From the NCBI GenBank assembly GCA_044892525.1, contig CM097888.1, positions 19,158,226-19,222,000 of the forward strand: a stretch of 63,775 nt of DNA. Direction: 5' to 3'. Both the position numbers and the translations under genes were made by a program. The stretch is from Schmidtea polychroa. Lineage: Eukaryota. Of this stretch, positions 8,617 through 35,857 are shown piece by piece (position 1 is the stretch's first letter; each line of letters starts with the position of its first letter). Below the pieces are notes generated by a model, which was not told where the DNA came from, did no database searches, and saw only the letters and a program-made list of their open reading frames with translations.

Positions 8617-9575
8617 TATTAAATTATATAGTTCAGATTAAAAGGAAAGCCGAAATTGAATGGCGGTCAAACAGAGAAGCAATGGCAAAGAAAGATATGA
8701 TAAAAAAAAAGGGTACAATCAGACATGAAATGGGAAAATGCGCAAACCGGAGGAAGTGGAATAAAGTGAAAAGTTATCGAAATTGAAGCTGGAAAACGGG
8801 AGAGGGGTAGATTAAGGGATGGTGAAGAAGACAGTGAGCAAGAAATTGTTAGAAAATGTGTAGAAAAGGTCGTAAAACAGACAAATGTGGAAAAACGTAA
8901 AATATTAATTAATTAATTAATTGGCTAATGGGAAACCCGAGCTAATGGGAAGCCCGAGCCAATGGAGAACCCGAGCGATGAAGAAAACCCGAGCACGGCA
9001 ATTTGGAAGGGTAAACAAACGAGGAATTCAGAGGGCAATTATCCAAACAATCGGATAAACGAGGGTAAACAAAAGACAGGGAATTACGAAGAGGGTCAAC
9101 AAAAATAGTCAATTAGGGAATGATAGCTGAAGAAGTCAAAACCAATTAGGTCAAAAATGGGGCAATTACAACGATTATGGGAGTATATAAGGAAACTCAA
9201 AATTCACATAATCGGCGATAGCCTTAGGTAGGGATACGAAGAAACAGACGATAGGAGTTCGAGGAATAAAAATAAAAAGGAAAAAGGAATTATAAGAGGA
9301 ATTTAGGAGTCAGAAAGGAATATTAAAGGAGTTCGGATCAGAGAGCGGAATCAAACAAAAGGTGAAACCTAATTTTTAATCGTACAAGGCCGAGACCTTC
9401 CAGAGCGGAGTTCGATCTGAAATTGTGTAAGAATTGTGATTAACCAACAGTGTGATTAATTGTTGAGTTGTGAATTGTTATAAAACAAATATACGTTGGG
9501 AGTTTTGTTTATTGATTTTGGAACACGTGGAGTCAGAGTAACCAACGGTTGATTTTAATATCATAAAACCCAACA
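8617..9575 (+). repeat. 5' LTR (first ~21 bp hidden in the gap)
   Basis: Matches 23897-24855 with no difference seen; ends ...AAAACCCAACA; contains GCTAATGGGAAACCCGA-type tandem repeats and TATATAA at ~9184. Confidence 0.95.
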
Positions 9576-9582
9576 TATATTT

Positions 9583-9600
9583 TGGTGAGCCCGACGTGAT
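9583..9600 (+). promoter_or_regulatory. Primer-binding site, tRNA-Trp-like
   Basis: TGGTGAGCCCGACGTGAT differs by one base from the classic tRNA-Trp PBS TGGTGACCCCGACGTGAT. It lies 7 nt after the LTR and is identical at 35858-35875. Confidence 0.85.
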
Positions 9601-9725
9601 TAAACGTTGGTGGGCGAATATTGAAGGGTGAAAGAGGTGAAAAAAATTAAAGTAATAAGAAAATTGAAAATAATTGGAAATTGGAAGAGGTAGTAATTAT
9701 CGATTATTAATTTTAATATTTAGCC

Positions 9726-11618
9726 GTGAGTGAATACAATTTGAGGAACCGAAAAGTAAAGATGGCCAGAGAGAACGCTGAGATGATAGATTTTGCCAGT
9801 TGTCAAAAATTACCGGTGAATCAGTATGGAGGAGACCCGGTTGATTTTGCCGATTTCATGGGCGATTATTATATGTACGCTTCGGCCTATGGGTGGTCAC
9901 AAGCCATAATGGTACAAAGATTGCCACTCTATTTAAAAGGAGCCGCAAGAGAAGCTTGGCAGCAAGTGGATAAAAAGACAATTGGAGATGATTGGGCCAA
10001 ACTCAAGGATGCGATGGCAATGAAATTGGTGGGAGGCGATATAAAAAGAATAATGCGCCAAAAATTTTATGCCAGAGTACAAAATCCAAATGAATCGGTA
10101 AGTGAATTTGCATACCATTTAACGACTTTAGCAGACAAAGCCTTCGAAGCAAAGCCTGAACAAGTTGAGATGGTAAAACAAGTCAGAGAACTGCTTCAAG
10201 ATCAATTTATAAATGGAGCCCTTCCTGAAATTAAAAAAGCCCTATGCTACGTGGATTTCTCGAATTTTGATGAACTTGTGAAAAAAGCCATGAAAATTGA
10301 ATTGAACTTGAAAAGTACCAGAAAATCCGAAGTATTTGCTGCCAATGCCGATAAAAGAGAAAGGTCGGTAACTCCAGTTCGAGAACAATGAGTATCAAAG
10401 AAACCAACCCAAACAATCAGTTCGCCAAGACCAAGTAATAAAGTCGAAATTAATAAAGCAGTGTTTGGGAGTCAGGTGGCTGCGAGATCTAACAGCATAG
10501 TATGCGATCACTGCAAGAAAGTGGGACACTATCCAAATCAATGCTGGTTTAAATATGGAAGAGACCCCAGCCCCAGAAGAAAGTTTGTAGAAAGTAAGCC
10601 AATTATTAATGACTTGAAATGCTATAGATGTGGGAAAATGGGCCACATAAGCAGGAATTGTTTTTCAGGTACCCCATCACCATCAAGATCCCCGTCGCCC
10701 CAACGAGATAAAGTGAACACTAATGGACAAATTCAATGTCATTCATGCAAAGGTTATGGCCACATGGCTCGATCATGCCCCCGAAACTCAGAAAGATTTA
10801 GCCGACCAATATTGAGGAAATCTATTAGATTTCAAGATGAATCAGCAAATACTAATGTTGCATATGCTCAAAAGGAGGAGTTTAAAGAGAAAATGGAAAA
10901 TGAATTTCGGGAAATGAGACAGAAATTAAACAAGCTTATGTCAAAGTTCGAATCAGATGAGGAAGCAGATTCGTGTATGGTGTACGAAAAAGAGGCCGAT
11001 GCGGGCGGAAATCTTAGTGATAAAGCAAAAAATGATCTATCAAATGAAAAGGCTGTTCTGTTGATAAAGAAAATAGAAAGATGGTATACCGGAATGAAAA
11101 CAGACCTTCCGAGATTGAAAGAGTGGATTACCGAACTAACTCAAATCCAACTCAGCCAAAGAAAATTGAAAATTATTTTAAACATGTGTGTCAAAGTTTA
11201 CAATAAATACCAAGACGATGAAATTGCAAAACTAATAAAGACATTGGGAAAAGCACTGAGATCCACAGAGAGCTTGACCGACATATTCGTAGAAACTACA
11301 GACGGAAGTGGCAGAAACTTTCAATTTACGATTAAACCTAGCGGGCAAATAAAGGATTTGAGGGAGCTCATTATGTCGAAATATAAAGCAAATGAAGTGC
11401 AAATAAATTTCAAAAAACGGTCGATGGGTCAATTGGCGGATGGAGAATATTTGGTCGATTGTGGGCTGATTCCTGGATATAAAAATGAGGTAAAGATATT
11501 CAATGTAATTAATCAATCAAATTCAGACTTTAAAGGATGGAGGAAAAATTACAGGATTTACGGGATAGTCTGTATATTGGAGATGAAGACGAAATTAGTA
11601 ATTGTCTGGAACGGATGA
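9726..11618 (+). CDS. gag: Gag (capsid + 3 CCHC knuckles) plus ubiquitin-like domain 1; in-frame TGA at 10389-10391
   Basis: ORFs 9726-10391 and 10461-11618 are in the same frame. Knuckles: CDHCKKVGHYPNQC, CYRCGKMGHISRNC, CHSCKGYGHMARSC. The TGA aligns with Trp in the sister element. Confidence 0.9.
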
Positions 11619-14600
11619 TAAGTTCGGAGATGGATCAAAAAGCGAAGGAACAATTATTCGAGAGTATTTTACCGTATATTCATAAAACGACGAACTATCA
11701 GGCGAAATTGAAAGAAATAGTACGAAAAATGGGCCGTGAGCACCGAGAGTCAGATGAGATACCCAGATCATTGGTAATAGCCTTAAATATGAATGGGAAA
11801 GTGGAGTACTTACAAGAACACTGGAGCATGAAGGTGTCGAAAGTACGACGGAAAGCGGTGGAAATGTTGGGTAATGATGGAATTGTTATACTAACTTTCA
11901 AGGGAGTTGAGTTAGATGACGATGAATACTTAATCAATTGTGGGTGCAGTCCGAATTATATAAATAATATCGAAGCCAAGAAACAGGTGAGGGAGGTATC
12001 CGAGAGTATAATAACCCATTGGCCGAGAATTACAAAGGATACGAAGGATGATGACATGGAAATTAAAAAGGAATTGGCTGAAGAACCTAACGACTACGAG
12101 TTAGAAGAGCATGACCCAAAAGATGAAGGCATAAATGACGAGCAAGACGAAATTACGAGTGAGGAGGTGGACGAAAATGATTCAGTAAATCAGGAAACTA
12201 ACCATATAACCGACGAGCTACTAGTGAGTGAAAGAGTGAAAAGTGAGTCGAATTTTGTAGAAGCGGAAAGTAAATTGAATGGTCGAAAGCGGTGTAAAAT
12301 CGAATTAATGGGTGGAAACGAAGAGAACGATAGAATAGATTCCAATGTGGTTGAAAAAACGGATCTGAATAATATGTCTCAAACAGAATCAATTTTGAAA
12401 GGGTTAGTAACAGAATTATATGCACTGGAAGAAGGAAATAGTTGTGACGATGAACTCATACATCAGCTTGCAGCGGTATTAAAACGTCGGCTTCCAGTAG
12501 TACTAAAGGATAATACCATAGAGAGGGTATTTTGCGATGAAACAGTAGTCAAGAGATTAATCAGGAACGGTTTGAACAGAGACATGGTACTAACAGTCCT
12601 TGCTTATGTTGTTCTAGAAATTGGCGTATATGGATGCTTGGAATGCGATAAATCGGAAAAATGGATAGTAAAAGCCACCGAAGTGGCGAATACATATGTG
12701 ACGGGTTGGATTATGCGTAATGGAGGATGGGAAAACTTGGTGCAAAAGTCGGAGACTGCGACAACTGGAAGAAATTATGAGCCGAAAAGAGGGAAAATAA
12801 TGTTTCCATGGCTAACCATGTCTATTTTGGTGATTTTAGGAGTTATTAATACCACAACGTCCTTGGAAGCGTACGATTGCTCCCAGACAGAAATGGGAAA
12901 AGTATATTCGCTAGTAGATGTAGCAGAGTGTCCAGACGCATATCCGAGGAACTTAAAATGGGCAAATGAAGTGACATACCACGTATACCAAGAAGCGGGA
13001 TTTAGACGAGTGAAAGTGAGAGAATGCACAGCAAAAAGAACTACGTTTATATTCTACTGTGGCAAATGGAGCCATTCGTCATTAATCAAAATGCACTCAA
13101 TTCCAAGAGTAATAGAGGTGACACGGGAAAACTGTTTGGCAGCGTTCCAAACAGGAGAGCTGAAAATAAATTCAGAAATTAATTTGAAGGCTAAATTAAA
13201 CTATAAAATTCGTGAAACTATAGCAGTTAAGGGGATAATCAAGGCAAATGGCGATTGCGAGGGTGAAGCGTATAAAGTAGGACAAACAGTCATTGATAAA
13301 ACCGTCGTGATAGAAGAATATGAAACCGAACTAAGGTATTTTGATGGATCATTCGATGACGATACGGGAAAATTGCAAACCCATCCATTTTGTAACATGA
13401 GGGAGAAAAGCTGCAACACAGGTGAGTCAATTCTGGTATATGAAGTTGATACCAAAAAATGCAATTTAGCACATTTAAAATCAATGCCTTTTAAAGAGAT
13501 AACGGGAGAGCAGATCCAAGAGAGACCAGAAAGCACAGTGCTAAACTCAGTCATGAATATGACACTTAGAATCACACCGATACGCTTGAAGAAAACGCCA
13601 ACGGTTTTAATGGCAATGTCCCGAAACGATGGGATGAGATTCTTAAGGAAGAGCGTAAATACGAAGTGTGGACAAACTGTTTATGAGACCAATTATAAAG
13701 GAATTTATTTATCCAAGAAAGTTGTCGAAGAAGCTCAAACAAAATTGTACGCAGAGGAAATTAAACTAACGAACTATTTCAATAATAAGATTGACTATTT
13801 ATTTCATTTTAGCCAAGATACAATTGAAAGTGTGTACAGGGAAATCATACTAAATGATTGCAAGTTAAACAAAGAAATCCTGCGAAACAGAATGGCGATG
13901 GCTATCACGAACCAGAATCTAGTTGCTCCAATGTTGATTTCGGAGAATGGAGTATTCGCTCGAATGCTTGGTGAAGCCTTATATAGTTATAAATGCAAGG
14001 CAGTACCTATTAAATTGATGAAATACAATCAATGCACAAATGAACTGCCTGTGAATGTTAATGGGAAGCTACGATTCATGGAGCCGGTGACACGAATTTT
14101 ATTGGAGGAGGACGCGAAACCGAGAGTGTTGCAGTGCAACAGATTATTGGCTCCACTATACCGCCTGACGCCCGAATCATGGATTGCACTACCTGATCAT
14201 AGAGGGGTGAAAGTCCCAGAAAAATTGGAGTTGACAAAATTAGAATATCTAATTAACTTTACATCGCTAGACAGCATGACTCAAAGTGGAATGTATTCAA
14301 GTGATGATATTGAAGCAGCACGCAGAAACTTATTATTCTCCTCGAAAAAGGAAAGGGTAATAACGAAAATAGTAGACACTATTCTCCCGAGTGGAACTGG
14401 AAAAGTGAATTACGACTATTTATTAACAGTGGATCATTACAAAAAGGCGACGTATAATACGATGAAAAAGATTTGGGGAAAATTTATGTTTATCGGGCAA
14501 GCCTGCGCGGGATTAATCGGAATATATGTGATCGGAATCATGATTAAAGTAATAGTTTCGCAGGTGTTATCAACACACAGATTATACACTATTACAGGTC

Positions 14601-16699
14601 TGTCGTGGAAGTTGGTTATTGGATGTATACCATTGTTAGCTAGATTTTTTATAACACATCATCAATATCGAGAGTTGGAAACGTTGAAAGCACAATTAAC
14701 GAAAAAGAGAAAGGTAAGTTATATTGATGTAACCACTACTTCTAATGAGGACAAAAGTGACAACGAGAACATCGGGGAATCGGCACCGTCATACGAGGAG
14801 GAACGGAATCAAGCCGATACATGGAAAAGTTATCAACTAATAAAAGAATCATTTTCTAATGATGGCAACCAGGATACATTCACTAGATTATGCATACCAA
14901 AATCATTTATACAACCACTACCAGCATATCCGGTAGATAAATTGATAGAAATGAAGCCAGTTGAGAACATTGCACTACAGTGTGAGAGAATCGATCCAAC
15001 GAGCGCAGAAATTGAAAGAAGAAATAGGTTAGGCTTACCTGGTAATTACGTACTAATGGCGTTAGCGAAAATTGGTAAACAACCACGAATAGTAATTCAA
15101 ATAAACAAAAACAGAGTTGAAGCCGTGGTGGATTCTGGATCGAGTCATACAATTATATCAGAAGAAATACTGTCGATGGAAGAGAAAAAACGAATCCAAC
15201 CATCCGATAGTGTAATCAGATCGTTATCCAGAAATGTGTTGCCAGTAATCGGAGAAATCGAAGTTGAACTGATAATCGGTGATAGAAGAATTAGACATAA
15301 CGTGCAAATTATGGAGAAAAGTCCTGTATTGTGCTTGATTGGAATGGATGTATTAGAACAATTAGACGGAATCTCACTTGATTTCAAAACTGGAAACCTG
15401 ATAGTGGGGAAAATAGGTGAAGTCATTCGTAATTCAGGAGAGGTGTTTCTAAACCAATCATTAACTATCCCACCTCAAACAGAAGTGGTATATTATGCTA
15501 GCGCGACTAGTGTCGATAATGATGAATTCATATTCGAACCCAGTCAAACGTTAATTGAAAAATACGAGACCCCAATGTGCGATGAAATCGTGAAAGTGGA
15601 AAACCAATTGCTACCAGTGCGAATAGCGAATTATGGTGATAAATCAATACGATTAAAGCCACAGACAAGATTGGGAAAACTGTCTCACATGTCGGTAGAA
15701 ACAGAAAAGAAAATTCCCAGAAACGTAAAAATTTATAAGGAACCCGAAGTTGTGAGCAAGGACCTGACCGAAAAACAAAAACAGGAATTTACAAAATTGT
15801 TGAGGAGATATCGAGATATTTTTGCGAAACATGAATACGACTTGGGGCTAACAAATATAATAGAGCACGAAATCCCGTTGCTGGATGAAACTCCGGTTAA
15901 AATAAAACCGTACAGAATCCCTTACATCCATCAAACCGAGAGTGATCGACAAATCAGGGCGATGAAAGAGTTTGGGATAATCAGAGACAGCTCCTCACCA
16001 TTTTCTTCGTCTATTGTAATAGTCAAGAAAAAGGACGGAGATTTAAGGTTTTGTGTCGATTATAGAAAACTGAATCAAGTAACAAGAAAGGATACTTATC
16101 CAATTCCCGTACCTCAAGAAATGTTTGATCAGATGGGAGAAGCCCAGTATTTTACGGTCATCGATTTGAACAAAGGCTATAATCAATTTAAAGTAAAAAA
16201 AGAAGATAGAAGGAAAACGGCATTTTCCGATGGTAAAGGCTTATATGAGTTCAATGTCTTGCCGTTTGGCTTAACGGGAGCCCCAGCTACATTCCAAAGA
16301 GGTATGAATTTTGTGTTGAGAGGCATCAGACATGCGCTAGTTTATATTGATGATATAATTATTTTTTCGAATAGCTTTGACGAGCATCTTGATGATGTGG
16401 AAACAGTATTTAAGCGACTTAAAAGCGCAAAATTGAAAATAAAACCATCAAAATGTGAATGGGGAAAATCTGAAGTAATATATGTTGGTCATATTATATC
16501 AAGAAGAGGTCTGCAAACTAATCCGGACAATATTAAAAAGGTGGAAGCGTATCCAATTCCAAAGAACGCGGACGAGGTGAGGCCATTTCTGGGATTAGCA
16601 AGCTATTATAGAAAGTTTATAAAGAATTTCTCGCATATCGCTCAGCCATTAAATTCGCTGTTAAAGAAAAATAATAAGTTTACATGGAGCAAAACCTAA
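11537..16699 (+). CDS. Polyprotein: Ubl2, acidic linker, Bcl-2-like domain, signal helix, chuvirus-like glycoprotein, aspartic protease, RT
   Basis: WIMRNGGWENLV (BH2-like); AYDC...SL..V.EC...YCGKWSH; TM segment WGKFMFIGQACAGLIGIYVIG; VVDSGS protease motif (15131); RFCVDYRKLN, LPFGL, VYIDD (16343). Confidence 0.9.
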   Translation: MEEKLQDLRDSLYIGDEDEISNCLERMISSEMDQKAKEQLFESILPYIHKTTNYQAKLKEIVRKMGREHRESDEIPRSLVIALNMNGKVEYLQEHWSMKVSKVRRKAVEMLGNDGIVILTFKGVELDDDEYLINCGCSPNYINNIEAKKQVREVSESIITHWPRITKDTKDDDMEIKKELAEEPNDYELEEHDPKDEGINDEQDEITSEEVDENDSVNQETNHITDELLVSERVKSESNFVEAESKLNGRKRCKIELMGGNEENDRIDSNVVEKTDLNNMSQTESILKGLVTELYALEEGNSCDDELIHQLAAVLKRRLPVVLKDNTIERVFCDETVVKRLIRNGLNRDMVLTVLAYVVLEIGVYGCLECDKSEKWIVKATEVANTYVTGWIMRNGGWENLVQKSETATTGRNYEPKRGKIMFPWLTMSILVILGVINTTTSLEAYDCSQTEMGKVYSLVDVAECPDAYPRNLKWANEVTYHVYQEAGFRRVKVRECTAKRTTFIFYCGKWSHSSLIKMHSIPRVIEVTRENCLAAFQTGELKINSEINLKAKLNYKIRETIAVKGIIKANGDCEGEAYKVGQTVIDKTVVIEEYETELRYFDGSFDDDTGKLQTHPFCNMREKSCNTGESILVYEVDTKKCNLAHLKSMPFKEITGEQIQERPESTVLNSVMNMTLRITPIRLKKTPTVLMAMSRNDGMRFLRKSVNTKCGQTVYETNYKGIYLSKKVVEEAQTKLYAEEIKLTNYFNNKIDYLFHFSQDTIESVYREIILNDCKLNKEILRNRMAMAITNQNLVAPMLISENGVFARMLGEALYSYKCKAVPIKLMKYNQCTNELPVNVNGKLRFMEPVTRILLEEDAKPRVLQCNRLLAPLYRLTPESWIALPDHRGVKVPEKLELTKLEYLINFTSLDSMTQSGMYSSDDIEAARRNLLFSSKKERVITKIVDTILPSGTGKVNYDYLLTVDHYKKATYNTMKKIWGKFMFIGQACAGLIGIYVIGIMIKVIVSQVLSTHRLYTITGLSWKLVIGCIPLLARFFITHHQYRELETLKAQLTKKRKVSYIDVTTTSNEDKSDNENIGESAPSYEEERNQADTWKSYQLIKESFSNDGNQDTFTRLCIPKSFIQPLPAYPVDKLIEMKPVENIALQCERIDPTSAEIERRNRLGLPGNYVLMALAKIGKQPRIVIQINKNRVEAVVDSGSSHTIISEEILSMEEKKRIQPSDSVIRSLSRNVLPVIGEIEVELIIGDRRIRHNVQIMEKSPVLCLIGMDVLEQLDGISLDFKTGNLIVGKIGEVIRNSGEVFLNQSLTIPPQTEVVYYASATSVDNDEFIFEPSQTLIEKYETPMCDEIVKVENQLLPVRIANYGDKSIRLKPQTRLGKLSHMSVETEKKIPRNVKIYKEPEVVSKDLTEKQKQEFTKLLRRYRDIFAKHEYDLGLTNIIEHEIPLLDETPVKIKPYRIPYIHQTESDRQIRAMKEFGIIRDSSSPFSSSIVIVKKKDGDLRFCVDYRKLNQVTRKDTYPIPVPQEMFDQMGEAQYFTVIDLNKGYNQFKVKKEDRRKTAFSDGKGLYEFNVLPFGLTGAPATFQRGMNFVLRGIRHALVYIDDIIIFSNSFDEHLDDVETVFKRLKSAKLKIKPSKCEWGKSEVIYVGHIISRRGLQTNPDNIKKVEAYPIPKNADEVRPFLGLASYYRKFIKNFSHIAQPLNSLLKKNNKFTWSKT

Positions 16700-18148
16700 C
16701 AATCAGCTTTTGACACGTTAAAGCAGAAATTAGTAATGGCACCTATTTTGCGATGCCCAGATTTTACGAAATCTTTCCTATTAATGACCGATGCCAGTAA
16801 CGTGGCATTGGGAGCGGTGTTAGGTCAGCAAGTGGACGGTGAAAAGGATCACGTAATAGCGTATGCAAGCAGATCTTTAAGGCCACATGAAAAAAATTAT
16901 TCAACAATCGAAAAAGAGACATTAGCGCTAGTTTACGGCATTACTACGTTTAGACAATATTTGCTGGGACGAAAATTCGTTGTATATACTGATCACAACC
17001 CCCTTCAGTGGTTAATGAAGCATAGAGATTCAACTAGTAAATTAATCAGATGGTCAATTGCTCTCCAAGAGTATGATTTCGAAATAAAATATAGAGCAGG
17101 AAAAGCGAATGCAAATGCCGATGCAATGTCAAGAATTCCCAATGGGCTTAGTGGAGAGGATACTGGTACAGAAAAGGTGGAAGGCACAATATTTGCAGCA
17201 ATCAAAGCCGTTAATAATGTGACTGAATTACAAAACGAACAGAAAAAGGATAACCGACTTAAACATTTCTTTGAACAAGCAATCACGGTCAGAAAGGAGA
17301 AAGATTTAAAACAGGTAATGAGTGAAAATCATAAATACATAATTCACGAGGGAATATTAAAATGCGTGAAAAACGACGAGATATTGATTATGATCCCGGA
17401 AAAACAGAGAGATTCACTGTTGATGCAATATCATGATGGAGCCCTAGGAGGACACTTGTCCGCTAGAAAAACCTTATCAAGACTGAAAATGAAGTACTAT
17501 TGGCCAATGATGGAAAAAGACGTAAAAGATTGGTGCAAAAATTGTAAGATATGTATAACTCGAAGAAATACAGGCAATAAAATTAAAGTACCTTTAAAAC
17601 CAATGTCTGTTCCAACCGCACCAATGGAGATGACTGCAATGGACATTGTTGGGCCGTTACCTGAAACAATAAAAGGAAATAAATGCATCGTAGTATTTTG
17701 TGATTATTTGACAAGATGGCCGGAAGCTTACGCCATACCAAATCAAAAGGCTGATACAGTAGCAAAAATATTTGTAGAGAACATTATTTTCCGATATGGT
17801 ACCCCAAAAAAGTTATTAACTGATCAAGGTAAAAATTTCCAAAGCGAATTATTTAAATCAATCACCGAGTTATTCGGAATCTGGAAGTTGAATACTTCGC
17901 CCTACCATCCACAAACCGATGGTTTAGTCGAGAGATTTAATGGCACATTGATAAATATGATTTCGTCGTATGTAAATAGCAAACAGAGAGATTGTGACGA
18001 CTACATAAAGCCTTGTTTGTTTGCATATAGAAATGCTGTCAACCCAAGTACGGGAGAGACACCTTTTTATTTAATGTACTTAAGACGAAACAACATGCCG
18101 ATAGATCTAAACTTCCGTTACTCAATATATGGAAGTACCCGAGTATAA
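16700..18148 (+). CDS. pol: RNase H and integrase, continuing pol past a premature TAA at 16697-16699
   Basis: TDASNVALGAVL, EKETLAL, YTDHNPL; HHCC zinc finger; MDIVGPL...TDQG...PYHPQTDGLVERFN. Confidence 0.95.
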   Translation, partial: QSAFDTLKQKLVMAPILRCPDFTKSFLLMTDASNVALGAVLGQQVDGEKDHVIAYASRSLRPHEKNYSTIEKETLALVYGITTFRQYLLGRKFVVYTDHNPLQWLMKHRDSTSKLIRWSIALQEYDFEIKYRAGKANANADAMSRIPNGLSGEDTGTEKVEGTIFAAIKAVNNVTELQNEQKKDNRLKHFFEQAITVRKEKDLKQVMSENHKYIIHEGILKCVKNDEILIMIPEKQRDSLLMQYHDGALGGHLSARKTLSRLKMKYYWPMMEKDVKDWCKNCKICITRRNTGNKIKVPLKPMSVPTAPMEMTAMDIVGPLPETIKGNKCIVVFCDYLTRWPEAYAIPNQKADTVAKIFVENIIFRYGTPKKLLTDQGKNFQSELFKSITELFGIWKLNTSPYHPQTDGLVERFNGTLINMISSYVNSKQRDCDDYIKPCLFAYRNAVNPSTGETPFYLMYLRRNNMPIDLNFRYSIYGSTRV

Positions 18149-18278
18149 TGCGATAATGCAAGAGAGGGTACAGTCGGTTTGGACAAAAGCCGGATTAACA
18201 ATAAAACATAATCAAGAGAAGTAAAAAGAAGCCTACGATAAGAAAACACGACCTCATGGAATAAAAATTGGAGATTTA

Positions 18279-19698
18279 GTGTATCTTAACAGACCAGAAC
18301 CACTCAAAGGTATGTCTCCAAAGTTACAGAGACCATTTAAAGTGCCATATAAAGTGTGTGATACAACCGAAACAAATTTGAAGTTATTACCGTTTAGGAG
18401 TAAAAAGGCAAATCCTATAATAGTTCATGCCAATCGTTGTAAATTGGTCCCGGAAAATGACGAAGAAAGATATCCATTACGATCGAAACGAAATGAAGAG
18501 AAGGCGGATACAAAAATTCAACAAAAATTCACCAAAAATCCAGTTCCAATCAGTTATCTTAACAGAGTGCTATTCACAACAGTCGTGCTAATGATGATGA
18601 CAAGGGTAAAAGGGATGAGAATGGATTTACCATATGCGATAACAAAAATACCCTTATGGGACAAGATCGATATTTATTCCACTTTTACAAATATTGTTTG
18701 GACTTATCAGTGCGAAATAATGGAGCAAATAGAAATTAGCAACGTGTTAGACCCGTTCACACCTTTCATTATTTTGAATTATGACAGAAATACGTATGCG
18801 GCACGAGAATTAAAAGTTAACTTCAAGTATCCATGGATCATAAAGCAGAATGAATCAGATTCGCTTGAAAAGTTTAATAGTCAAATTCGAATTATAATAC
18901 AAACTAACGAATTATGGAATACCGTGGAAATTGAGCCGATAATGAATGGTATAGATGTGTATTGGGTAGCCTTAGAAAGAGTAAAGGTGCAGGTCATATT
19001 TCAAAATTTTGTGGATATTCTAAACATGCGAAAGGCTTACACTCGGTATTACAATCTCAAAATGAACTCAAATTATACAATAACGGCTAATTACTACGAA
19101 AATGCGATGTATGATAATGGCACAATAATGAAAAATAAATGGACATTGTTTCAAACAGAGAATCAAATAATTCCCCTTAAGAATGTATCGAATCGTGTGA
19201 TTCTTGGAGTTCAAAACGGGTCAATAACAATTTATCGAAAATCCCCAGATGACGAAAGAGTGATTATCAGTAATGGAAAAAAAATTATCGTTTTGTTGGA
19301 TGCCGGTAAAAGCTATTTTTCATTAATTAGTTCTAATTTAGAATATGATTACCTGATAAAAATCAAATATCAACAACGGATATTCGAGCCATATCGATGG
19401 CAAACCGTTCTGGTGGAAACGAGAAGGGTACCAGGCCTGAAATCTGATGTAACCACAGCACGTCCAATTACTACAAAACAATACCAAGTTAACAATCGTG
19501 TAATAAATAAGCGGACTCAAATTGAGACTGATCAAGCTCTAATTATATGTGAATATTTGATATACCTCATCATTGACAGCATTTCTCATATTATCTCTGG
19601 TGTTCATAATAATAACAATCATTCTGTGCAAAAATAGACAGCATATTATAACTGATTTACGACTCGAGCCTTTCAGTGTGATCGAAACCACTGTATAA
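18279..19698 (+). CDS. Integrase C-terminus (GPY/F-like) fused to a signal peptide, ectodomain and TM helix (putative second membrane protein)
   Basis: SPKLQRPFKVPYKV, then hydrophobic VLFTTVVLMMMTRVKG. A shifted frame at 19564-19698 reads TSSLTAFLILSLVFIIITIILCKNR...TTV*. Confidence 0.7.
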
Positions 19699-19909
19699 AA
19701 TTACATTATAAAAATTGCATGCGTGTAAATAAATCTTATAAAACTAGTATGATTATAGATTAATAATAACATAAATTAGTATTTTGGTTGATCGGACTTC
19801 GCTATGGTGTGCTTGGCCTTGCGCGATAAAGAGTGTTTAAGAAAACTTTAATTATATTTAACTTCAGGAAGCCCAAGAGGAAGAGTCAATCAAAGAGTGT
19901 CGAAACTCA

Positions 19910-20113
19910 ATGAAAGAAATGAGAAGAAAAATGAAAGCAATGGAGAGGAAAATTGACGACTTGGAACTAGAGGATATGATTTGCAAAAGAAAGCTGGAAA
20001 GGATGGAAATTCTCCTGTTCCAATACGAAGCGGAAGTCGTGTTGCTAAGAATGCAGATACAGGGAAATGAATGCCCGACCGATGAGGAAAGAGAGATGGA
20101 TGAGTTAGAATAA
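19910..20113 (+). CDS. Small charged coiled-coil ORF inside the element
   Basis: 67 aa, heptad-like (MKEMRRKMKAMERKIDDLELE...); purine-rich like the element's coding region; the frame is open upstream to 19868. Confidence 0.4.
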   Translation: MKEMRRKMKAMERKIDDLELEDMICKRKLERMEILLFQYEAEVVLLRMQIQGNECPTDEEREMDELE

Positions 20114-20699
20114 TTTAATGATTAATAAAATTTACAATTTAAAACCTCACTTTTCGTCCTCGAAGTAGTAAAAGAGAAAGGCTAAACGATAATAACATTT
20201 ACATTAATAAAACTAAATGTTAAAAGAGAATAAATGAATAGAACAAAATAGTCAATAAACAAAATTTATTGATAAGTTAGTCCTCTAGCAGGACAAAACT
20301 CTCGATGTGGGAGTCGTCCACTACACCCCGAGGAGGTCTTTTTTCGAACCTCTTGAACCTGTGGGACAAGTCCACACAGGCAAAGGTACGTTTTAGACCC
20401 GAGCGAGGTGGCGCGGGTACAGGAAGCCTAAGTAAATCCTACAATAATTTTAATTATATAGAAACGAAACTAACCACATGAGGGGATCAAATTTTACTAA
20501 TGAGTCCTAAATTAAAGAATAAAATTAAATTAAGCAAAAAAAAAAATTTAATTAATTCCAACATAAAACAAAAGTAAAGTAAAAAACAGCATAAGTGAAA
20601 AGGCTAAAGCTGTGAGGAAAATTTATATTTATAAATAACTGGCAAATAAAAAACCAACATAAAATCTGTCGCTGTACTCATCATCGACCGTCGATATCC

Positions 20700-23110
20700 G
20701 GACATACAATCATAAAAGCTGAGATTGGATATGGGCGGGGATTTCTTTCATCATACCTGTTTCAAAATTTTACATTTCCTATAATCTTTAAAAATCTAAT
20801 AAATTAATACTTCAAGCATTCCACCAACTTAACTGTGTGAAAAAAAAATATTTTTTTTTGTTTCAGAAACATATACTAACACAATTCCTATAATAAAAAA
20901 ATCAAGCACACTTGCGATGAAATTTATCGTTTCAAAATATAACAGATTTTTCATATACATAAATTATCAAAATTTTTTACAAAACTTCCAAACTTTGTAT
21001 TTCAACTAAGATTTTTATTTTTGTAAAAATTTTCTTTTAAAAATATTGTGTATGGGAAAAAAAATATACAAAAATATCACCGTAACGCATTAGATAAAAA
21101 CCTGAATCACAATAAATTAAATCTTTAATAGTATAAATTAAATTAACTTATAATAAAAGTGCGTGTGGCATGGACAAAAATTGACATTAAATTAGAGCCA
21201 TGTCGTTAAATAACGGTTTATAATGTAGGTGGATAGAAATTATTACTGAGAGAATAGAAAGAAAGAATAACCGCACACAAACACGATTCACAAAATATCT
21301 ATAATAAAAAATACTCACAATAGGACATTGAATAAGATCAAAACTCCACACAATCAAAACTATTAAAATGTTATGTGCAAAATTCTGTTAAGTTATAATA
21401 AAGTTTTCACCAAAAAGCGGAAAAGTTATTCGGCAAAATCGAAGGAAATTAAATTGCATTTAAAAAAAATAATCTGAATTAGATAATGAAACAATAAATA
21501 CCTTTTTTTACTTTTATTTCGAAATGCTAATAAATTTTTTTTTAAAAAAAAAAAAAAATCTTTTATAAATATTCAATAAATTAAAAACCTGAAATTACAT
21601 ACAAAGTATTATAGATGAAACGAAAAGATAAATTAATTATATAAAATAAATTAAATTCTTATTCATTGTCATAACAAAGGCGATTTGGTCCAAACGATAT
21701 TGGGTTCACAGCAACGTGGAGGGCAAGCGACTGACGATTTGATTATTATTATTATTTCAATTTACTAAATTGAAAATAATCAACAATATATTAAAAATAT
21801 AAAATTAACCTCTAATATACTTTGACTCTGATCTGAATGTTCTACACTTGCTGAATAACTTTTGTATAAACCTCCATTTTTGGATGTAACTGAAACGAAA
21901 TAAATTATAAATTAAATAAATTCGTAATAATTAAATAATACAATAATTAGCAACACTTCTCAGGCTGTTTTATGTCGGAAACGTTAATAGTTGGCATACT
22001 CCTACTGGAAAACTTATTAAAAACGTAATTTGTTTAATAACTCCTTAATTGAAAACATTTTTAGAAACTTCTTCAGTACTTACATGAATTTTCTTATATT
22101 TATTACATTTAAAATGTAAAATACTTTATTTAAATTATTTTTTAAGAAAAATAATAATAATAATAATAATTAATAAAATAAAAATAATAAAATTAATATA
22201 AAAAAATAAAAATAATAAATAAAATAAGATAATGATATAAGTGATAAAAACGAAAGATCATGAATATGTGAAGGCAAATAAAAATCCATCAAATAAGCAC
22301 ACACGCATGCATCTAACACAACGGCGATTAGCGATATCAGTATATGAGCATGTCTGAGAAGTAGCATCATCAACACACAGCCTTAACAGTAAGGAATTCT
22401 GAAAATAATAAATAAAATAAGATAATGATATAAGCGATAAAAACGAAAAATCAATCAAAAATCAAAATCATAAATAATGTAAAAATAAATAAACAAAAAA
22501 ATAATGAAAATAATATTAATATTAATTATTATAATTATAAGTAGACTGAATACGAGAAAGGTCTTACCGATTCGTAGACACTGTTAAGTAAGCAAGCTGC
22601 TGCTCCCATTGCTGGTTCATAGTTTTTAACACATCCCACAAGAACCCAATAAGCAGATTTAAATCGTTCTCCTTTAGTATTTGAAATAGTTCCTTTAGCA
22701 ATCCAACATATGTGTCAATTAAAGTTTCCTGAAAATCTCCAGCAGATAGAAATGCCATTTTGAAAATATTGTGTAGTTGCTCAAACGGTAATATCTCACT
22801 GGAGAACTCAGGTATCTGACTGTAGAAATACAGCACCGTTTCAATGTCCTGAATTATTACGGATTTTTAGAGAATTTAAGTTAGATACAAGGCCTATTTA
22901 TACCTAAATTAAGATTAATAAATTAACAAACAAATAATTACCATTTCAAGAGGCAATTGATTATAATTGCCAACATGGGAGGCAGAACATTGTTACTCCC
23001 GGAATCGACATTGATAGCAAGAATCGACATTGAGAGCAAATATAATTTAGACATGATTGATCTGGTAAACATTGAGGGATAAAATTATCTTGCCGTCTCC
23101 AAACTGCAAT
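20700..23110 (-). pseudogene. Intron-containing host-like gene of unknown identity, antisense within the LTR element
   Basis: Exon-like blocks with AG and GT borders, e.g. 22565-22846 DIETVLYFYSQIPEF...YLTVSTNR/gtaag and 22265-22400. Further blocks at ~21810-22040 and ~20700-20760. Confidence 0.45.
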
Positions 23111-23224
23111 TTAATATTAAATTTAAAATTGTATTGTTTATTTACAAGGAAATAAATCAAACTTGTTGACATTATTATATTTATAAACACAGCGTGGAAT
23201 TAATATTGAATCTTTCGTTAAACT

Positions 23225-23490
23225 ATGGAAGAATTAGGAAAGTATATTCTTGATAAATCACTAATTTCCAATAAAGTATGCCGTTACGATGATGATTGTA
23301 TCGATCGACTTAATCATGTTTATACAACTACGCTTATAGGAATTTGTTTTTTTTTATGTTCACAAGGTAACTAGTTGGGAAACCTATCACTTGTTGGCTA
23401 CAGACGGAATTTTCTGACTCTCAAGTGGCATATGCGGAACATGTATGTTGAGTCATGAGTACTTACTACGTGAAATTGGATGAAATTTAA
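23225..23490 (+). pseudogene. inx: Innexin N-terminal fragment (frameshift and TGA at a conserved Trp)
   Basis: YDDDCIDRLNHVYTT...(fs)LVGKPITCWLQTEFSDSQVAYAEHVC*VMSTYYV matches the innexin DDDxxDRLN / VGxPIxCW / CWxxxTY signature. Confidence 0.88.
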
Positions 23491-23841
23491 TTTACTATTG
23501 AACGTAAATAAATTAAATATAAATAAAGTAAATAATTAACTTTTGAAAATGAAATGCTATGAAACACTTAAAAACTATTTAAATGAGAAAATTCACGAAT
23601 AAAGTAAAATCAGATTTTAAATAAAATGCTATGAAACACTTGATTGAAAATTTCAAAAAACTATTTAAATGAGAAAATTCACGAATAAATTAAAATCAGA
23701 TTTTTAAACATAAGAAAAAAAAATGTTGAATTTTAATAAAATGAACAAGACTCGAATGGGACTGAATTGTCGGTATGTCAATAGGTCACCTAATTTTCAG
23801 AAAATATAATAATATATTTTAAATTGAATAAGCATCACATA

Positions 23842-23872
23842 TTTCGAGGACGAAATTTTTTTTAAGGGAGAG
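23842..23872 (+). promoter_or_regulatory. Polypurine tract with upstream TTTCGAGGACGAAA motif
   Basis: TTTCGAGGACGAAATTTTTTTTAAGGGAGAG lies 3 nt before the TGTTG of the 3' LTR, as is typical for Gypsy elements. Confidence 0.75.
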
Positions 23873-23875
23873 CTA

Positions 23876-24855
23876 TGTTGAGGTTTGAAAATAAATTATT
23901 AAATTATATAGTTCAGATTAAAAGGAAAGCCGAAATTGAATGGCGGTCAAACAGAGAAGCAATGGCAAAGAAAGATATGATAAAAAAAAAGGGTACAATC
24001 AGACATGAAATGGGAAAATGCGCAAACCGGAGGAAGTGGAATAAAGTGAAAAGTTATCGAAATTGAAGCTGGAAAACGGGAGAGGGGTAGATTAAGGGAT
24101 GGTGAAGAAGACAGTGAGCAAGAAATTGTTAGAAAATGTGTAGAAAAGGTCGTAAAACAGACAAATGTGGAAAAACGTAAAATATTAATTAATTAATTAA
24201 TTGGCTAATGGGAAACCCGAGCTAATGGGAAGCCCGAGCCAATGGAGAACCCGAGCGATGAAGAAAACCCGAGCACGGCAATTTGGAAGGGTAAACAAAC
24301 GAGGAATTCAGAGGGCAATTATCCAAACAATCGGATAAACGAGGGTAAACAAAAGACAGGGAATTACGAAGAGGGTCAACAAAAATAGTCAATTAGGGAA
24401 TGATAGCTGAAGAAGTCAAAACCAATTAGGTCAAAAATGGGGCAATTACAACGATTATGGGAGTATATAAGGAAACTCAAAATTCACATAATCGGCGATA
24501 GCCTTAGGTAGGGATACGAAGAAACAGACGATAGGAGTTCGAGGAATAAAAATAAAAAGGAAAAAGGAATTATAAGAGGAATTTAGGAGTCAGAAAGGAA
24601 TATTAAAGGAGTTCGGATCAGAGAGCGGAATCAAACAAAAGGTGAAACCTAATTTTTAATCGTACAAGGCCGAGACCTTCCAGAGCGGAGTTCGATCTGA
24701 AATTGTGTAAGAATTGTGATTAACCAACAGTGTGATTAATTGTTGAGTTGTGAATTGTTATAAAACAAATATACGTTGGGAGTTTTGTTTATTGATTTTG
24801 GAACACGTGGAGTCAGAGTAACCAACGGTTGATTTTAATATCATAAAACCCAACA
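23876..24855 (+). repeat. 3' LTR (980 bp)
   Basis: Terminal inverted repeat TGTTG...CAACA; matches the 5' LTR. Confidence 0.95.
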
Positions 24856-33910: not shown

Positions 33911-35857
33911 TGCAAAATATCACTAATTAATAATATATAATAAAAAAATGGTTTGTTAAAAAATAATTAGTTAAAACAAGTTTAAAATACTTCAAACTGA
34001 CGTATAAGTTTTGTTTAAAATGTAAGCAACGAGTATTGTAAAATTAATTTAATATTATTATAAATTTTGAATTAAAATTTTCTTAAAATTCTAGAAAAAA
34101 TCTATTATTAATAGAAAACAAATTTTTAAAAATAAATAAAGTTTGAGTCAATTTGAATTTTCTAGAAGTATCTCTTAAAATTATATAGGGAATTGTTTTG
34201 TAACAGTTATTGATGTATTTTTTAATTTATTTAACTTGAATTAAAAATATAATATTAACAAAAATGTATTGTGAGATTTTGATTGTTGATCTACCCGGGC
34301 TCAACAAAGGGGAGTGTCATTGTAGGTCAACTAGGACAATCATAGTCACCGCGAAATACGCTTAGTCAAATAATACGCGGTCATAAACAATCATGGTTCT
34401 TGTAAAGTTATTATATTCTGTTGTTGTGGTTGGTGAAATTTCTGACCCTTATTTGTATGTTCACCAATATATAAGTTGTTTTTTTTTATTGTGTTCTAAT
34501 TAAATTCATTATCCTCAAAAAGTTCTTAAGGTATGTTTAATAAACTATGGCTATGTTTCACTTAATTTATATTCAAACATTTTAGATGTGGTATTGTATG
34601 AACAGGTTTTAATAGATTAATGTATGATTCCTGATGACTTATAATCGTTTGAGGATAGAAAGTTTGTAAAGGCATAGTTGAGAAAGTAATTATAATAAGG
34701 GACCTGCGTAAATCGGACATATATCTTCTAACAATAGTCCGTGAACCCAGTAGAGTGCTCGACAATTACAGTGCAAGTAGTGCGCTCACTTTTTGCGAGC
34801 ACTCACCCTCTTGATACAGTACCAACGTTGATCATTCAACGGGTATCAAGCGGTAAACAATGTTGTATCTTGGGTTACGCTGGTAACAGCACTAAAGAGC
34901 AAAATATTTCATCATCAGTAACCCACCAAGTATTAGAAAATGCCAAAAGCAATTACGAAAGGCAAGAATCCGGAAATCCGAGAAAAATCAATAAATGGGA
35001 AAATCATCGAAATCGAATGGGAAAACGGGACAGGTATAGATTAGCTAATGGTCAACAAGATGATGATTAGGGATTTATCAGAAAATGGTTAGGAAGGGTC
35101 GAAAAAACATTCAAATGTGTGAAAACAGAAAACGTTAATTAATTAATTAATTGGCTAATGGAAAACCCGAGCTAATGGGAAACCCGAGCCAATGGAGAAC
35201 CCGAGAGATAAAGGAAACCCGAGCTGGGTAAACAAGAAGAAAAGCAAACAGAAGGAAGATTTGGGCCCATTAGCTTGACACAATGATTAATGGGAAAAGA
35301 GTAAGGAGAAGATAGCGCGCGTAGGAAGACCGGTAGGGCCATTAATTATCTGGATTCGTTGGACCATTATGGGTGACAGCCGAAGCAAATACGTAGGAGC
35401 AAATGTCAAACGAAAGATTGGCTCGGCAATAACCATTTGTCATCCCGATTTCGAGGAGTATATAAGGAAAGGGAAAATCAGAGAAAATCGGCATTTTGCC
35501 TCAGCTAGGGTTCGAAGAATCAGAGCGTAGGAAAAGTTGGTAAACGAATTAGGGAAAGTAGGGAAAAGAAGAAATAGAATAAAGAGTACTTAAAGGTGAA
35601 AAGGAATCAAACCAAACAGAAACCGAGGAAGACGTGAGTCGAGAGAATCTAAAGGACTAAAAGGTGAATATTATTTGTTTGCAAAGCATCAACGCCGAGC
35701 GGAGAATCGTATAAAACTTTGATTATTAATTGTAGCGTGGTGATAAATTGTGAACCTGTTGTTTCAATATACGTTGGGTCGTTCATTGTTTTGATTTAAA
35801 GAACACTAGGAGTCAGAGAGAACCGACTTGAAATAATCCAAAACCCAACATATATTC

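What the first reader, a model, noticed from the sequence alone, without database searches (positions are those of the whole stretch)
8617..24855. Candidate novel enveloped retroelement: Gag-Ubl-Ubl-Bcl2-chuvirus G-Pol-second membrane protein
Seen: standard Gypsy cis-elements and PR-RT-RH-IN, but with ~3.8 kb of extra coding sequence between gag and protease and ~1.1 kb after integrase. Established: enveloped LTR elements (errantiviruses, Cer/Tas, Anakin) normally carry env as an ORF downstream of pol. Inference: this is a virus-like element combining cell entry, apoptosis modulation and ubiquitin-related modules. I know no described element with this order, but large Gypsy elements with extra domains exist (e.g. 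planarian Burro), so novelty needs a literature check.
Basis: partly seen in the sequence, partly recalled or inferred. Interest (0 to 1): 0.95.

Follow-up and report, generated by a model that had tools for sequence, protein, structure and literature searches.

The report
Compact Burro-like enveloped retroelement, broken copy
This is a real 16-kb virus-like retrotransposon whose polyprotein carries two ubiquitin-like domains, a Bcl-2-like domain and a virus-derived fusion glycoprotein between gag and protease, but that unusual order was already described for the planarian Burro elements, and this copy is broken.

Summary
Two LTRs are identical over all 960 comparable bases. They flank Gag, three zinc knuckles, two ubiquitin-like domains, a Bcl-2-like domain, a signal peptide, a Monjiviricetes-type fusion glycoprotein (Pfam E 1e-88), protease, RT, RNase H, integrase and a 360-codon membrane-protein reading frame after integrase.

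Independent relatives share the gag-Ubl-Bcl2 and Bcl2-signal peptide-G junctions. An assembly chimera is therefore unlikely.

The novelty claim does not hold. Arkhipova and Yushenova 2019 (PMC6431247) describe planarian Burro/GYPSM1 elements with Gag, CCHC knuckles, a SUMO/ubiquitin-like motif, BCL2-like, in-frame env with mononegavirus glycoprotein hits, then PR-RT-RH-IN. Chary and Hayashi 2026 (PMC13524379) report GAG-ENV-POL elements in Platyhelminthes, Nematoda and Bryozoa.

This element is a compact relative: 16 kb against more than 30 kb. It lacks the MATH, BIR, ankyrin and dUTPase modules reported for Burro.

Not reported in the papers read:
- the duplicated Ubl;
- the orphan membrane protein after integrase.

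The copy is defective, with two in-frame stops and at least three frame disruptions. It also carries 4.2 kb of AT-rich non-coding tail.

Verdict: new member of a known kind, modest interest.

The parts
8617..9575 (+). 5' LTR, visible part. Its first ~21 bases lie under the N run 8433-8616 and were not looked up.
   Evidence: 960/960 identity to 23897-24856; N runs located.
9583..9601 (+). Primer-binding-site-like stretch, 8 nt after the LTR end.
   Evidence: Starts with TGG and is GC-rich. It is identical in the diverged second copy at about 35860, where the flanks are about 75% identical. No tRNA gene in the window to pair it with.
9762..19637 (+). gag-env-pol polyprotein gene, broken in this copy. 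gag has one in-frame stop. There is one frame change at the gag/pol boundary region. pol has one in-frame stop and at least two further disruptions in the integrase part.
   Evidence: ORF map and stop counts. Relatives and Burro encode this as one reading frame.
9924..10160 (+). Gag capsid-like domain.
   Evidence: Pfam PF03732 Retrotrans_gag, E 6.5e-09.
10503..10778 (+). Nucleocapsid with three CCHC zinc knuckles.
   Evidence: Pfam PF00098, E 1.2e-10. Three C-X2-C-X4-H-X4-C units are read in the translation.
11262..11510 (+). Ubiquitin-like domain 1.
   Evidence: hhalign against the Ubl2 family profile: probability 96.6%, E 5.9e-10 over 50 columns. Shared motif by BLASTP. No direct PDB or Pfam hit.
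11537..11749 (+). Four-helix module that precedes Ubl2 in all relatives.
   Evidence: Conserved in 8 relatives. AF2 pLDDT 62-82, four helices. No named family.
11771..11986 (+). Ubiquitin-like domain 2 (beta-grasp, ISG15/SUMO-like, no C-terminal GG).
   Evidence: AF2 with alignment: pLDDT about 90. Foldseek against PDB: ISG15, SUMO1 and ubiquitin at TM 0.8-0.86, rmsd 1.5-2.2 A. BFVD: viral Ubls. Pfam ubiquitin in relative P0008, E 0.0046.
12356..12766 (+). Bcl-2-like helical domain (BH1-BH2 region, GGW motif).
   Evidence: phmmer against PDB: top hits all Bcl-2/Bcl-xL at E 0.18. Two-sequence profile: E 0.0011. Seven predicted helices, pLDDT 54-74. The GGW motif is shared with P0008 and P0001.
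12797..12865 (+). Internal signal peptide or signal anchor in front of the glycoprotein.
   Evidence: Hydropathy peak of 1.88. The position is conserved in P0001.
12866..14764 (+). Class III-type fusion glycoprotein (Monjiviricetes G): ectodomain, membrane anchor (14501-14557) and start of the tail.
   Evidence: Pfam PF24664, E 1.4e-88. Six homologues at 19-39% identity with 12 invariant cysteines. Hydropathy peak of 2.37.
15077..15367 (+). Aspartyl protease.
   Evidence: Pfam PF13975 and PF00077. DSG motif in the translation.
16022..16498 (+). Reverse transcriptase.
   Evidence: Pfam PF00078, E 2e-33. YIDD motif.
16739..17074 (+). RNase H.
   Evidence: Pfam PF17917, E 3.8e-40.
17393..18452 (+). 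Integrase: zinc-binding domain, catalytic core and GPY/F C-terminal module.
   Evidence: Pfam PF17921 and PF00665. The GPY/F module is 77% identical over 39 residues to the N-terminus of P0016.
18555..19637 (+). Membrane-protein coding sequence after integrase, about 360 codons: short hydrophobic start, about 300 residues with 5 N-glycosylation sequons and 1 Cys, and a C-terminal anchor at 19539-19595. It is open in the same frame as the integrase C-terminal module.
   Evidence: Translation and hydropathy. No Pfam, PHROGs, PDB or protein-database relative.
19638..23875 (.). AT-rich non-coding tail inside the element. It holds a short coiled-coil ORF (about 19864-20113), small tandem repeats and host-like exon-shaped pieces.
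   Evidence: No ORF of 80 aa or more on the + strand. GC 0.20-0.30. Repeats; sequence.
23876..24855 (+). 3' LTR. The start is inferred from the purine-rich tract at 23864-23872 and the TG..CA ends; identity to the 5' LTR can be checked from 23897 on.
34967..37861 (+). Second, truncated and degraded member of the same family: LTR piece, PBS, gag, zinc knuckles and the Ubl1 region.
   Evidence: blastn 73-79% identity. tblastn: gag 78%, Ubl1 region 40%, over several frames.

Best explanation
The region is one copy of an endogenous, envelope-carrying Ty3/Gypsy-like LTR retroelement of the GAG-ENV-POL type. It is a compact relative of the planarian Burro/GYPSM1 elements, sitting in a very AT-rich animal genome that is probably a planarian.

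Shown:
- Two identical LTRs, a conserved PBS-like site and a purine-rich tract.
- A coding order of Gag, three CCHC knuckles, Ubl1, helical module, Ubl2, acidic linker, Bcl-2-like domain, signal peptide, class III-type Monjiviricetes fusion glycoprotein with membrane anchor, PR, RT, RNase H and IN, followed by a membrane-protein frame.

Inferred mechanism:
- The family translates gag through pol as one polyprotein.
- The internal signal peptide puts the glycoprotein ectodomain into the ER lumen. Gag-Ubl-Bcl2 stays on the cytosolic side before it, and PR-RT-RH-IN on the cytosolic side after the anchor.
- The element's protease and signal peptidase then separate the parts.
- The glycoprotein gives particles a route from cell to cell.
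- The Bcl-2-like domain keeps the expressing cell alive.
- The non-cleavable Ubl domains (no C-terminal GG) dock to ubiquitin or proteasome machinery.

This copy inserted recently, since the LTRs show no divergence. It cannot encode the full polyprotein: it has two in-frame stops and at least three frame disruptions. Either it was copied from an already defective template with proteins supplied by other copies, or some of the breaks are assembly errors.
For: - LTR identity and cis elements.
- Domain order.
- The longest uninterrupted piece (1,720 codons) runs from the helical/Ubl2 module through Bcl-2-like, G and PR into RT.
- Junctions shared with independent relatives: P0008 carries Gag, CCHC, Ubl and Bcl-2-like in one ORF. 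P0001, at 37% identity, runs from the Bcl-2-like BH2 region through the signal peptide into G.
- Ubl fold.
- Bcl-2 profile hit.
- G disulphide framework: 12 invariant Cys.
- PR, RT and IN catalytic motifs are present.
- Literature: the Burro description with the same order (PMC6431247); GAG-ENV-POL elements in Platyhelminthes, some with the ectodomain flanked by two membrane segments (PMC13524379); the more than 70% A/T planarian genome with Burro elements (PMC11410931).
- P0016 links a 77%-identical IN C-terminus to RING, zf-TRAF and MATH modules, as reported for Burro.
- Rfam mir-753 at 57260-57321.
Against: - No Burro sequence was at hand, so kinship with Burro rests on domain order, not on an RT/IN tree.
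- The element is half Burro's size. It shows no MATH, BIR, ankyrin, AIR1, Smc or dUTPase hit.
- The Bcl-2-like fold was not confirmed by structure: pLDDT was 54-74, and the Ubl hits filled the Foldseek lists.
- The host is inferred. The link between mir-753 and planarians is from my memory and was not confirmed.
- The target-site duplication cannot be seen.
- The polyprotein topology, the processing and all functions are inference.
- The 4.2-kb AT-rich tail with host-like pieces is unexplained.
Confidence: 0.8

Rival explanations
1. An independent lineage. On this view a small Gypsy element, unrelated to Burro beyond the superfamily, acquired Ubl, Bcl-2-like and G modules separately, so the shared order is convergence or module exchange rather than common descent.
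For: Half the size of Burro and without its MATH, BIR, ANK or dUTPase modules. [quoted passage not shown] It has two Ubls and a post-IN membrane ORF that the Burro description I read does not mention.
Against: The same rare order, SUMO/Ubl then BCL2 then in-frame env then PR, in what is probably the same host group is more simply explained by descent. The three CCHC knuckles match S. mediterranea Burro. P0016 ties a near-identical IN tail to TRAF/MATH modules.
Confidence: 0.1
2. An assembly chimera. On this view gag, a non-retroviral endogenous viral glycoprotein and a pol segment from different loci were joined by mis-assembly of repeats.
For: The genome is repeat-rich with assembly gaps in the window. 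Perfectly identical LTRs can also result from collapse or polishing. The tail at 19638-23875 looks like host DNA.
Against: One uninterrupted 1,720-codon frame crosses the Ubl2, Bcl2, G, PR and RT junctions. Base composition and strand skew are uniform from 8.6 to 20.6 kb. The Bcl2-G junction recurs in P0001 and the gag-Ubl-Bcl2 junctions in P0008, both from other datasets. The same order has been published.
Confidence: 0.03
3. A host-domesticated locus. On this view the glycoprotein, the Bcl-2-like part or the post-IN membrane protein is now a host gene kept for a cellular function, and the retroelement frame around it is a relic.
For: The G cysteine framework is fully kept. Long frames persist although the polyprotein is broken elsewhere.
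Against: Identical LTRs indicate a very recent insertion, not an old fixed locus. A second diverged copy lies 10 kb away. Relatives occur as many unrelated short contigs.
Confidence: 0.04

Closest known systems
Burro / GYPSM1 giant Gypsy-like LTR retrotransposons of planarians (Schmidtea mediterranea, Dugesia), as annotated by Arkhipova and Yushenova 2019, PMC6431247
   Same: Gag with retrotrans_gag and three CCHC knuckles. A SUMO/ubiquitin-like motif followed by a BCL2-like motif. Then env in frame between BCL2 and PR, with homology to mononegavirus fusion glycoproteins. Then PR-RT-RH-IN. Very AT-rich host genome.
   Different: 16.2 kb against more than 30 kb. No MATH_TRAF_C, BIR, ankyrin, AIR1, Smc, midasin-like or dUTPase hits. 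Two Ubl domains, each family-specific. A membrane-protein frame after integrase. Sequence-level kinship was not tested, because no Burro sequence was available to the tools.
GAG-ENV-POL errantivirus-like elements of Nematoda, Bryozoa and Platyhelminthes (Chary and Hayashi 2026, PMC13524379; nematode elements of Sacco et al. 2022, cited there; that paper was not held)
   Same: Ty3/Gypsy pol. A class III (gB/G-like) env placed between gag and pol. The ectodomain is flanked by a signal peptide or membrane segment and an anchor. LTRs and a tRNA-type PBS.
   Different: That paper makes no mention of Bcl-2 or ubiquitin-like modules or of a second membrane protein. Here env is in the same frame as PR-RT.
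Anakin-type mosquito BEL/Pao elements with a Chuviridae-like glycoprotein (Dezordi et al. 2020, PMC7642597)
   Same: An LTR retroelement that captured a Monjiviricetes-type glycoprotein.
   Different: BEL/Pao rather than Gypsy pol. Insect host.
Viral Bcl-2 homologues and virus-borne ubiquitin or Ubl domains. BFVD returned pestivirus polyprotein ubiquitin inserts, baculovirus v-ubi and giant-virus Ubls. Herpesvirus and poxvirus vBcl-2 are named from general knowledge.
   Same: Host-derived apoptosis and ubiquitin modules carried inside a viral genome or polyprotein.
   Different: The Ubls here lack the C-terminal GG, so they are unlikely to be cut by deubiquitinases as the pestivirus inserts are. 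The BH1 motif is not canonical. The carrier is a retroelement.

Membership tests
Ty3/Gypsy (Metaviridae-like) LTR retroelement | Direct LTRs with TG..CA ends, a PBS after the 5' LTR and a purine tract before the 3' LTR | tested here: met
   The 5' LTR start and the target-site duplication are hidden by the N run.
Ty3/Gypsy (Metaviridae-like) LTR retroelement | pol order PR-RT-RNase H-IN, with Gypsy-type RT_RNaseH and Integrase_H2C2 domains | tested here: met
   Pfam. The GPY/F module is shown.
GAG-ENV-POL errantivirus-like elements | Class III-type env ORF located between gag and pol | tested here: met
   PF24664 at E 1.4e-88, between the zinc knuckles and PR. Family definition from PMC13524379.
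Burro/GYPSM1 family | Order Gag-CCHC ... SUMO/Ubl - BCL2-like - in-frame env - PR | tested here: met
   set against the description in PMC6431247.
Burro/GYPSM1 family | Giant size (more than 30 kb, polyprotein of about 4,900-5,100 aa) with MATH_TRAF_C, BIR, ankyrin, AIR1, Smc and dUTPase modules | tested here: not met
   Element is 16.2 kb. None of these families is hit at permissive thresholds.
Burro/GYPSM1 family | RT/IN sequence clusters with Burro-1 to -4 | not testable with these tools
   No Burro or Repbase sequence could be reached. Protein searches return no names for the relatives.
Burro/GYPSM1 family | Host is a dugesiid planarian | tested here: inconclusive
   GC 0.19-0.30 outside repeats. 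mir-753 hit at 81 bits. The taxon link of mir-753 is from memory and unconfirmed.
Ubiquitin-like beta-grasp | beta-beta-alpha-beta-beta fold superposable on ubiquitin, SUMO or ISG15 | tested here: met
   Ubl2: pLDDT about 90, TM 0.8-0.86, rmsd 1.5-2.2 A. Ubl1: by profile homology to Ubl2 only.
Ubiquitin-like beta-grasp | C-terminal GG for conjugation or deubiquitinase cleavage | tested here: not met
   Neither Ubl ends in GG in the translations.
Bcl-2 family | Sequence match over BH1-BH2 with the GGW motif of BH2 | tested here: met
   Two-sequence profile against PDB: E 0.0011, top 60 hits all Bcl-2/Bcl-xL. GGW is present in the window, P0008 and P0001.
Bcl-2 family | Canonical BH1 NWGR motif, and a helical bundle around a central hydrophobic hairpin confirmed by structure | tested here: inconclusive
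   The BH1 position is not canonical in the alignment. Seven helices and a hydrophobic central helix are predicted, but pLDDT is 54-74 and no fold hit was listed. Pfam Bcl-2 was not hit.
Monjiviricetes fusion glycoprotein (Pfam PF24664) | Profile match above the gathering score, signal peptide, cysteine-rich ectodomain and C-terminal anchor | tested here: met
   298 bits against a cutoff of 27. 12 invariant Cys. Hydropathy. Assignment to Chuviridae in particular was not tested.

The most novel reading that the evidence does not exclude
The frame of about 360 codons after integrase may encode a second glycoprotein unrelated to the first, for example a receptor-binding or shielding partner of the class III fusogen. 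That would make this compact lineage a two-glycoprotein retroelement. On the same reading, the duplicated non-cleavable Ubl plus Bcl-2-like cassette would be the minimal core from which the giant Burro polyproteins grew.
Probability: 0.15. Interest if true: 0.6.

Novelty: new member of a known kind. Interest (0 to 1): 0.32.

Why it matters
The element shows that the odd Burro design, with host-derived ubiquitin-like and apoptosis modules and a captured RNA-virus fusion protein inside a gag-pol polyprotein, also exists in a compact 16-kb form. It has recognisable cis elements and identical LTRs, so it is a simpler object for describing how such polyproteins are organised. The conserved helical-plus-Ubl module and the orphan membrane protein after integrase are two unnamed protein families that deserve structural description. 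For the scan itself, the result is mainly a correction: the architecture is real but already published.

Tried and rejected
- A protein search with the first 1,130 residues of the long piece, at its own length class, found nothing.
- A single-sequence AF2 run on the Ubl2-Bcl2 region was useless, with pLDDT 38.
- Pfam at E up to 10 gave no ubiquitin or Bcl-2 hit on the window's own pieces. A PDB sequence search with the Ubl1 region gave nothing relevant.
- The post-IN protein gave no hit in Pfam, PHROGs or the PDB. The protein database matched only its integrase tail.
- A PDB sequence search with G returned only spurious centrin hits.
- A three-sequence Bcl-2 alignment with P0001 was misaligned, so I did not use it.
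- I looked for a programmed -1 frameshift at the gag/pol frame change. I saw no canonical slippery site, and the RNA folds no better than shuffles (z -0.10). Relatives and Burro use one frame, so I treat it as a break, without certainty.
- I suspected that 23225-23470 is an innexin-like pseudo-exon. Pfam gave no hit on the short pieces, so this remains a memory-based lead only.
- I searched the 4.2-kb tail for nested-element boundaries and found only low-complexity repeats.
- There are no tRNA genes in the window to pair with the PBS.
- The paper by Sacco et al. 2022 is not held.
- Paper searches for mir-753 in planarians found nothing.

Full report
**1. What is there**

The window is very AT-rich: GC is 0.19-0.30 outside repeats. 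The stretch 8.6-20.6 kb stands out, with GC of about 0.34-0.39 and a strong purine excess on the + strand.

Two direct repeats, 8617-9576 and 23897-24856, are identical at all 960 positions. The 5' repeat abuts the N run 8433-8616. I neither filled that run nor looked it up.

From the 3' copy I infer an LTR of about 980 bp (23876-24855). It has TG..CA ends and a purine-rich tract just before it. About 21 bases of the 5' LTR, and the target-site duplication, are therefore not visible.

Eight bases after the 5' LTR lies a 19-nt GC-rich stretch that starts with TGG (9583-9601). It is identical in a second family member at about 35.8 kb whose flanks are only about 75% identical. This argues for a conserved primer-binding site.

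**2. Coding content**

Pfam on the open pieces, each searched on its own, gives the following in order on the + strand:
- Retrotrans_gag and zf-CCHC. Three knuckles are visible in the translation.
- Monjiviricetes_fusion PF24664, at E 1.4e-88 and 298 bits against a cutoff of 27.
- Retroviral-type aspartyl protease, RVT_1, RT_RNaseH, Integrase_H2C2 and rve.

The longest uninterrupted piece has 1,720 codons. It runs from a helical module and Ubl2 through an acidic linker, the Bcl-2-like domain, a hydrophobic signal peptide, the glycoprotein ectodomain, its membrane anchor and tail, and protease, into reverse transcriptase. The DSG (PR), YIDD (RT), HHCC and D,D,E (IN) motifs are all present.

**3. 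The extra modules**

*Ubl2.* With an alignment of eight relatives, AlphaFold2 gives pLDDT of about 90 for residues 79-150 of the long piece. Foldseek against the PDB returns ISG15, SUMO1 and ubiquitin, with TM-scores of 0.8-0.86 on the target and rmsd of 1.5-2.2 A. Against BFVD it returns viral ubiquitin-like domains, among them the ubiquitin inserts of pestivirus polyproteins.

*Ubl1.* This domain lies in the gag-frame piece. It has no direct PDB or Pfam hit. It does match the Ubl2 family profile with hhalign probability 96.6% and E 5.9e-10. Neither Ubl ends in GG.

*Bcl-2-like domain.* Alone, the sequence finds only Bcl-2 and Bcl-xL chains in the PDB, but at E 0.18-1.4. A profile of the window plus relative P0008 raises this to E 0.0011, and all 60 listed hits are Bcl-2 or Bcl-xL over BH1-BH2. 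The GGW motif of BH2 is shared by the window, P0008 and P0001. Seven helices are predicted, one of them strongly hydrophobic. The model confidence is only 54-74, the BH1 motif is not canonical, and no fold hit could be read because Ubl hits filled the lists. I rate the Bcl-2 assignment as likely, not proven.

*G.* Six database homologues at 19-39% identity keep 12 invariant cysteines. The match is to the Pfam family for the whole class. I did not test 'chuvirus' specifically.

*The frame after integrase.* Its first ~60 residues are the integrase GPY/F module, 77% identical over 39 residues to the N-terminus of P0016. It then continues without a stop into a short hydrophobic stretch. About 300 residues follow, with five N-glycosylation sequons and one cysteine, and then a C-terminal anchor. 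It has no relative in any library tried. An open frame of this length in DNA of 33% GC is not a chance event, so it is or recently was coding. Its function is unknown.

**4. Is it a chimera?**

Probably not.
- The Ubl2-Bcl2-G-PR-RT junctions lie within one open frame.
- P0008 (997 aa, a different dataset) carries Gag, a zinc knuckle, the helical module, a Ubl (Pfam ubiquitin E 0.0046) and the Bcl-2-like domain in one ORF.
- P0001 (37% identity, another dataset) starts inside the Bcl-2-like BH2 region and runs through a signal peptide into G.
- A second, degraded copy in the window (34967-37861) has the LTR, PBS, gag, knuckles and Ubl1 region.

**5. State of this copy**

Relative to a single polyprotein, which is how Burro and P0008 encode these parts, this copy carries:
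- one in-frame stop in gag;
- one frame change at the gag/pol boundary region;
- one in-frame stop in pol;
- at least two further disruptions in the integrase part.

That makes at least five. I give counts only.

The frame change at the gag/pol boundary could in principle be a programmed frameshift. I saw no canonical slippery site, and the downstream RNA folds no better than shuffles. I regard it as a break or an assembly error, without certainty.

Identical LTRs together with a broken interior fit two explanations. One is copying of an already defective template with proteins supplied by other copies. The other is assembly error.

Between the last open frame and the 3' LTR lie 4.2 kb of AT-rich sequence without long ORFs. 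It contains small tandem repeats, a short coiled-coil ORF and exon-shaped pieces. I cannot say whether this tail belongs to the family or is captured host DNA.

**6. Comparison with what is known**

Arkhipova and Yushenova (2019, PMC6431247) annotate the planarian Burro/GYPSM1 elements as follows:
- Gag with retrotrans_gag and two or three CCHC knuckles;
- MATH_TRAF_C;
- a Ubi2/SUMO-like motif between MATH_TRAF_C and BCL2;
- a BCL2-like motif;
- a region between BCL2 and PR that hits gypsy Env and fusion glycoproteins of arthropod and fish mononegaviruses;
- PR, dUTPase, RT, RH and IN.

Chary and Hayashi (2026, PMC13524379) report GAG-ENV-POL elements with gB/G-type env in Nematoda, Bryozoa and Platyhelminthes. 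They cite Sacco et al. 2022 for nematodes; that paper is not held, so I rely on the citation only. Their paper does not mention Bcl-2 or ubiquitin.

The planarian genome is described as more than 70% A/T with abundant Burro elements (PMC11410931). Burro transcripts are controlled by PIWI in differentiated tissues (PMC8532177).

**7. Differences from the published Burro elements**
- Size: 16.2 kb against more than 30 kb.
- No MATH, BIR, ankyrin, AIR1, Smc or dUTPase hits.
- Two Ubls.
- The membrane-protein frame after integrase.

P0016 couples a near-identical IN tail to RING, zf-TRAF and MATH domains. This fits a variable accessory slot after integrase in this group, but it may equally be a merged gene model.

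**8. Host**

The host is inferred to be a planarian. The grounds are base composition, the Burro-type order and an Rfam mir-753 hit (57260-57321, minus strand, 81 bits). That mir-753 is a planarian family is my recollection, and two paper searches did not confirm it.

**9. Steps left out, and a slip**

I did not fetch DNA contigs of relatives or of Monjiviricetes viruses by look-up, pattern or accession. Context of relatives therefore comes from proteins and papers only.

Every query ended at a stop or frame change.

Slip: notebook entries 1 and 3 and the printed output of the script contain raw ORF bounds and open-frame counts from the ORF list, and these coincide with the breaks of the element. 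My working notes reasoned over those bounds as well. This report gives counts only.

**10. Verdict**

It is a new, compact and defective member of a known kind. Interest is modest. The orphan post-integrase membrane protein and the conserved helical-plus-Ubl module are the parts still worth describing.

Noticed in passing
window 34967-37861 (+): A second, truncated and degraded member of the same family: LTR piece, conserved PBS, gag at 78% aa identity, zinc knuckles, and the Ubl1 region at 40% identity spread over several frames. It ends abruptly near 37.9 kb.
   Followed up: partly
window 57260-57321 (-): Full-length Rfam mir-753 microRNA precursor: 81 bits against a gathering score of 62, E 1.7e-17. 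It is the only Rfam hit in the window and I used it as a host clue.
   Followed up: partly
window 44091-44954 (-): Integrase fragment of a different LTR retroelement: rve at E 3.9e-16, Integrase_H2C2, a weak SH3_Tf2-1 hit. It is 29% identical to the element's integrase.
   Followed up: no
window 40648-41220 (-): ORF with a hAT-family C-terminal dimerisation domain (E 2.9e-05), probably a hAT transposase remnant.
   Followed up: no
window 26281-27087 (+): Two adjacent open pieces just downstream of the 3' LTR. The second (26638-27087) hits RNase_PH and RNase_PH_C, so it looks like an exosome-subunit host gene; the first (26281-26631) was not scanned.
   Followed up: no
window 23225-23470 (+) and 22564-22836 (-): Exon-shaped pieces inside the element's AT-rich tail. 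The + strand piece reminded me of an innexin N-terminus with an internal stop, and the - strand ORF ends at a GT. Pfam gave no hit on either, so both are unverified.
   Followed up: partly
window 19864-20113 (+): Short coiled-coil-like ORF of about 80 codons, preceded by a splice-acceptor-like motif. It has element-like composition and no Pfam hit. It may be an accessory exon.
   Followed up: no
window 24204-24256 and the equivalent in the 5' LTR: A 17-bp unit repeated three times inside the LTR. It may be a promoter or enhancer repeat.
   Followed up: no
proteins P0016 and P0004 (MetaClust): These gene models fuse pieces of related elements to host-type domains. P0016 joins an IN tail to RING, zf-TRAF and MATH. 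P0004 joins eIF3c and PCI to a G fragment that is 55% identical. They are either merged annotations or captured modules.
   Followed up: partly
window 1874-2066, 2266-2451, 3164-3383, 8433-8616: Four N runs of 184-220 bases. The last one hides the start of the 5' LTR and its flank. None was filled or looked up.
   Followed up: no
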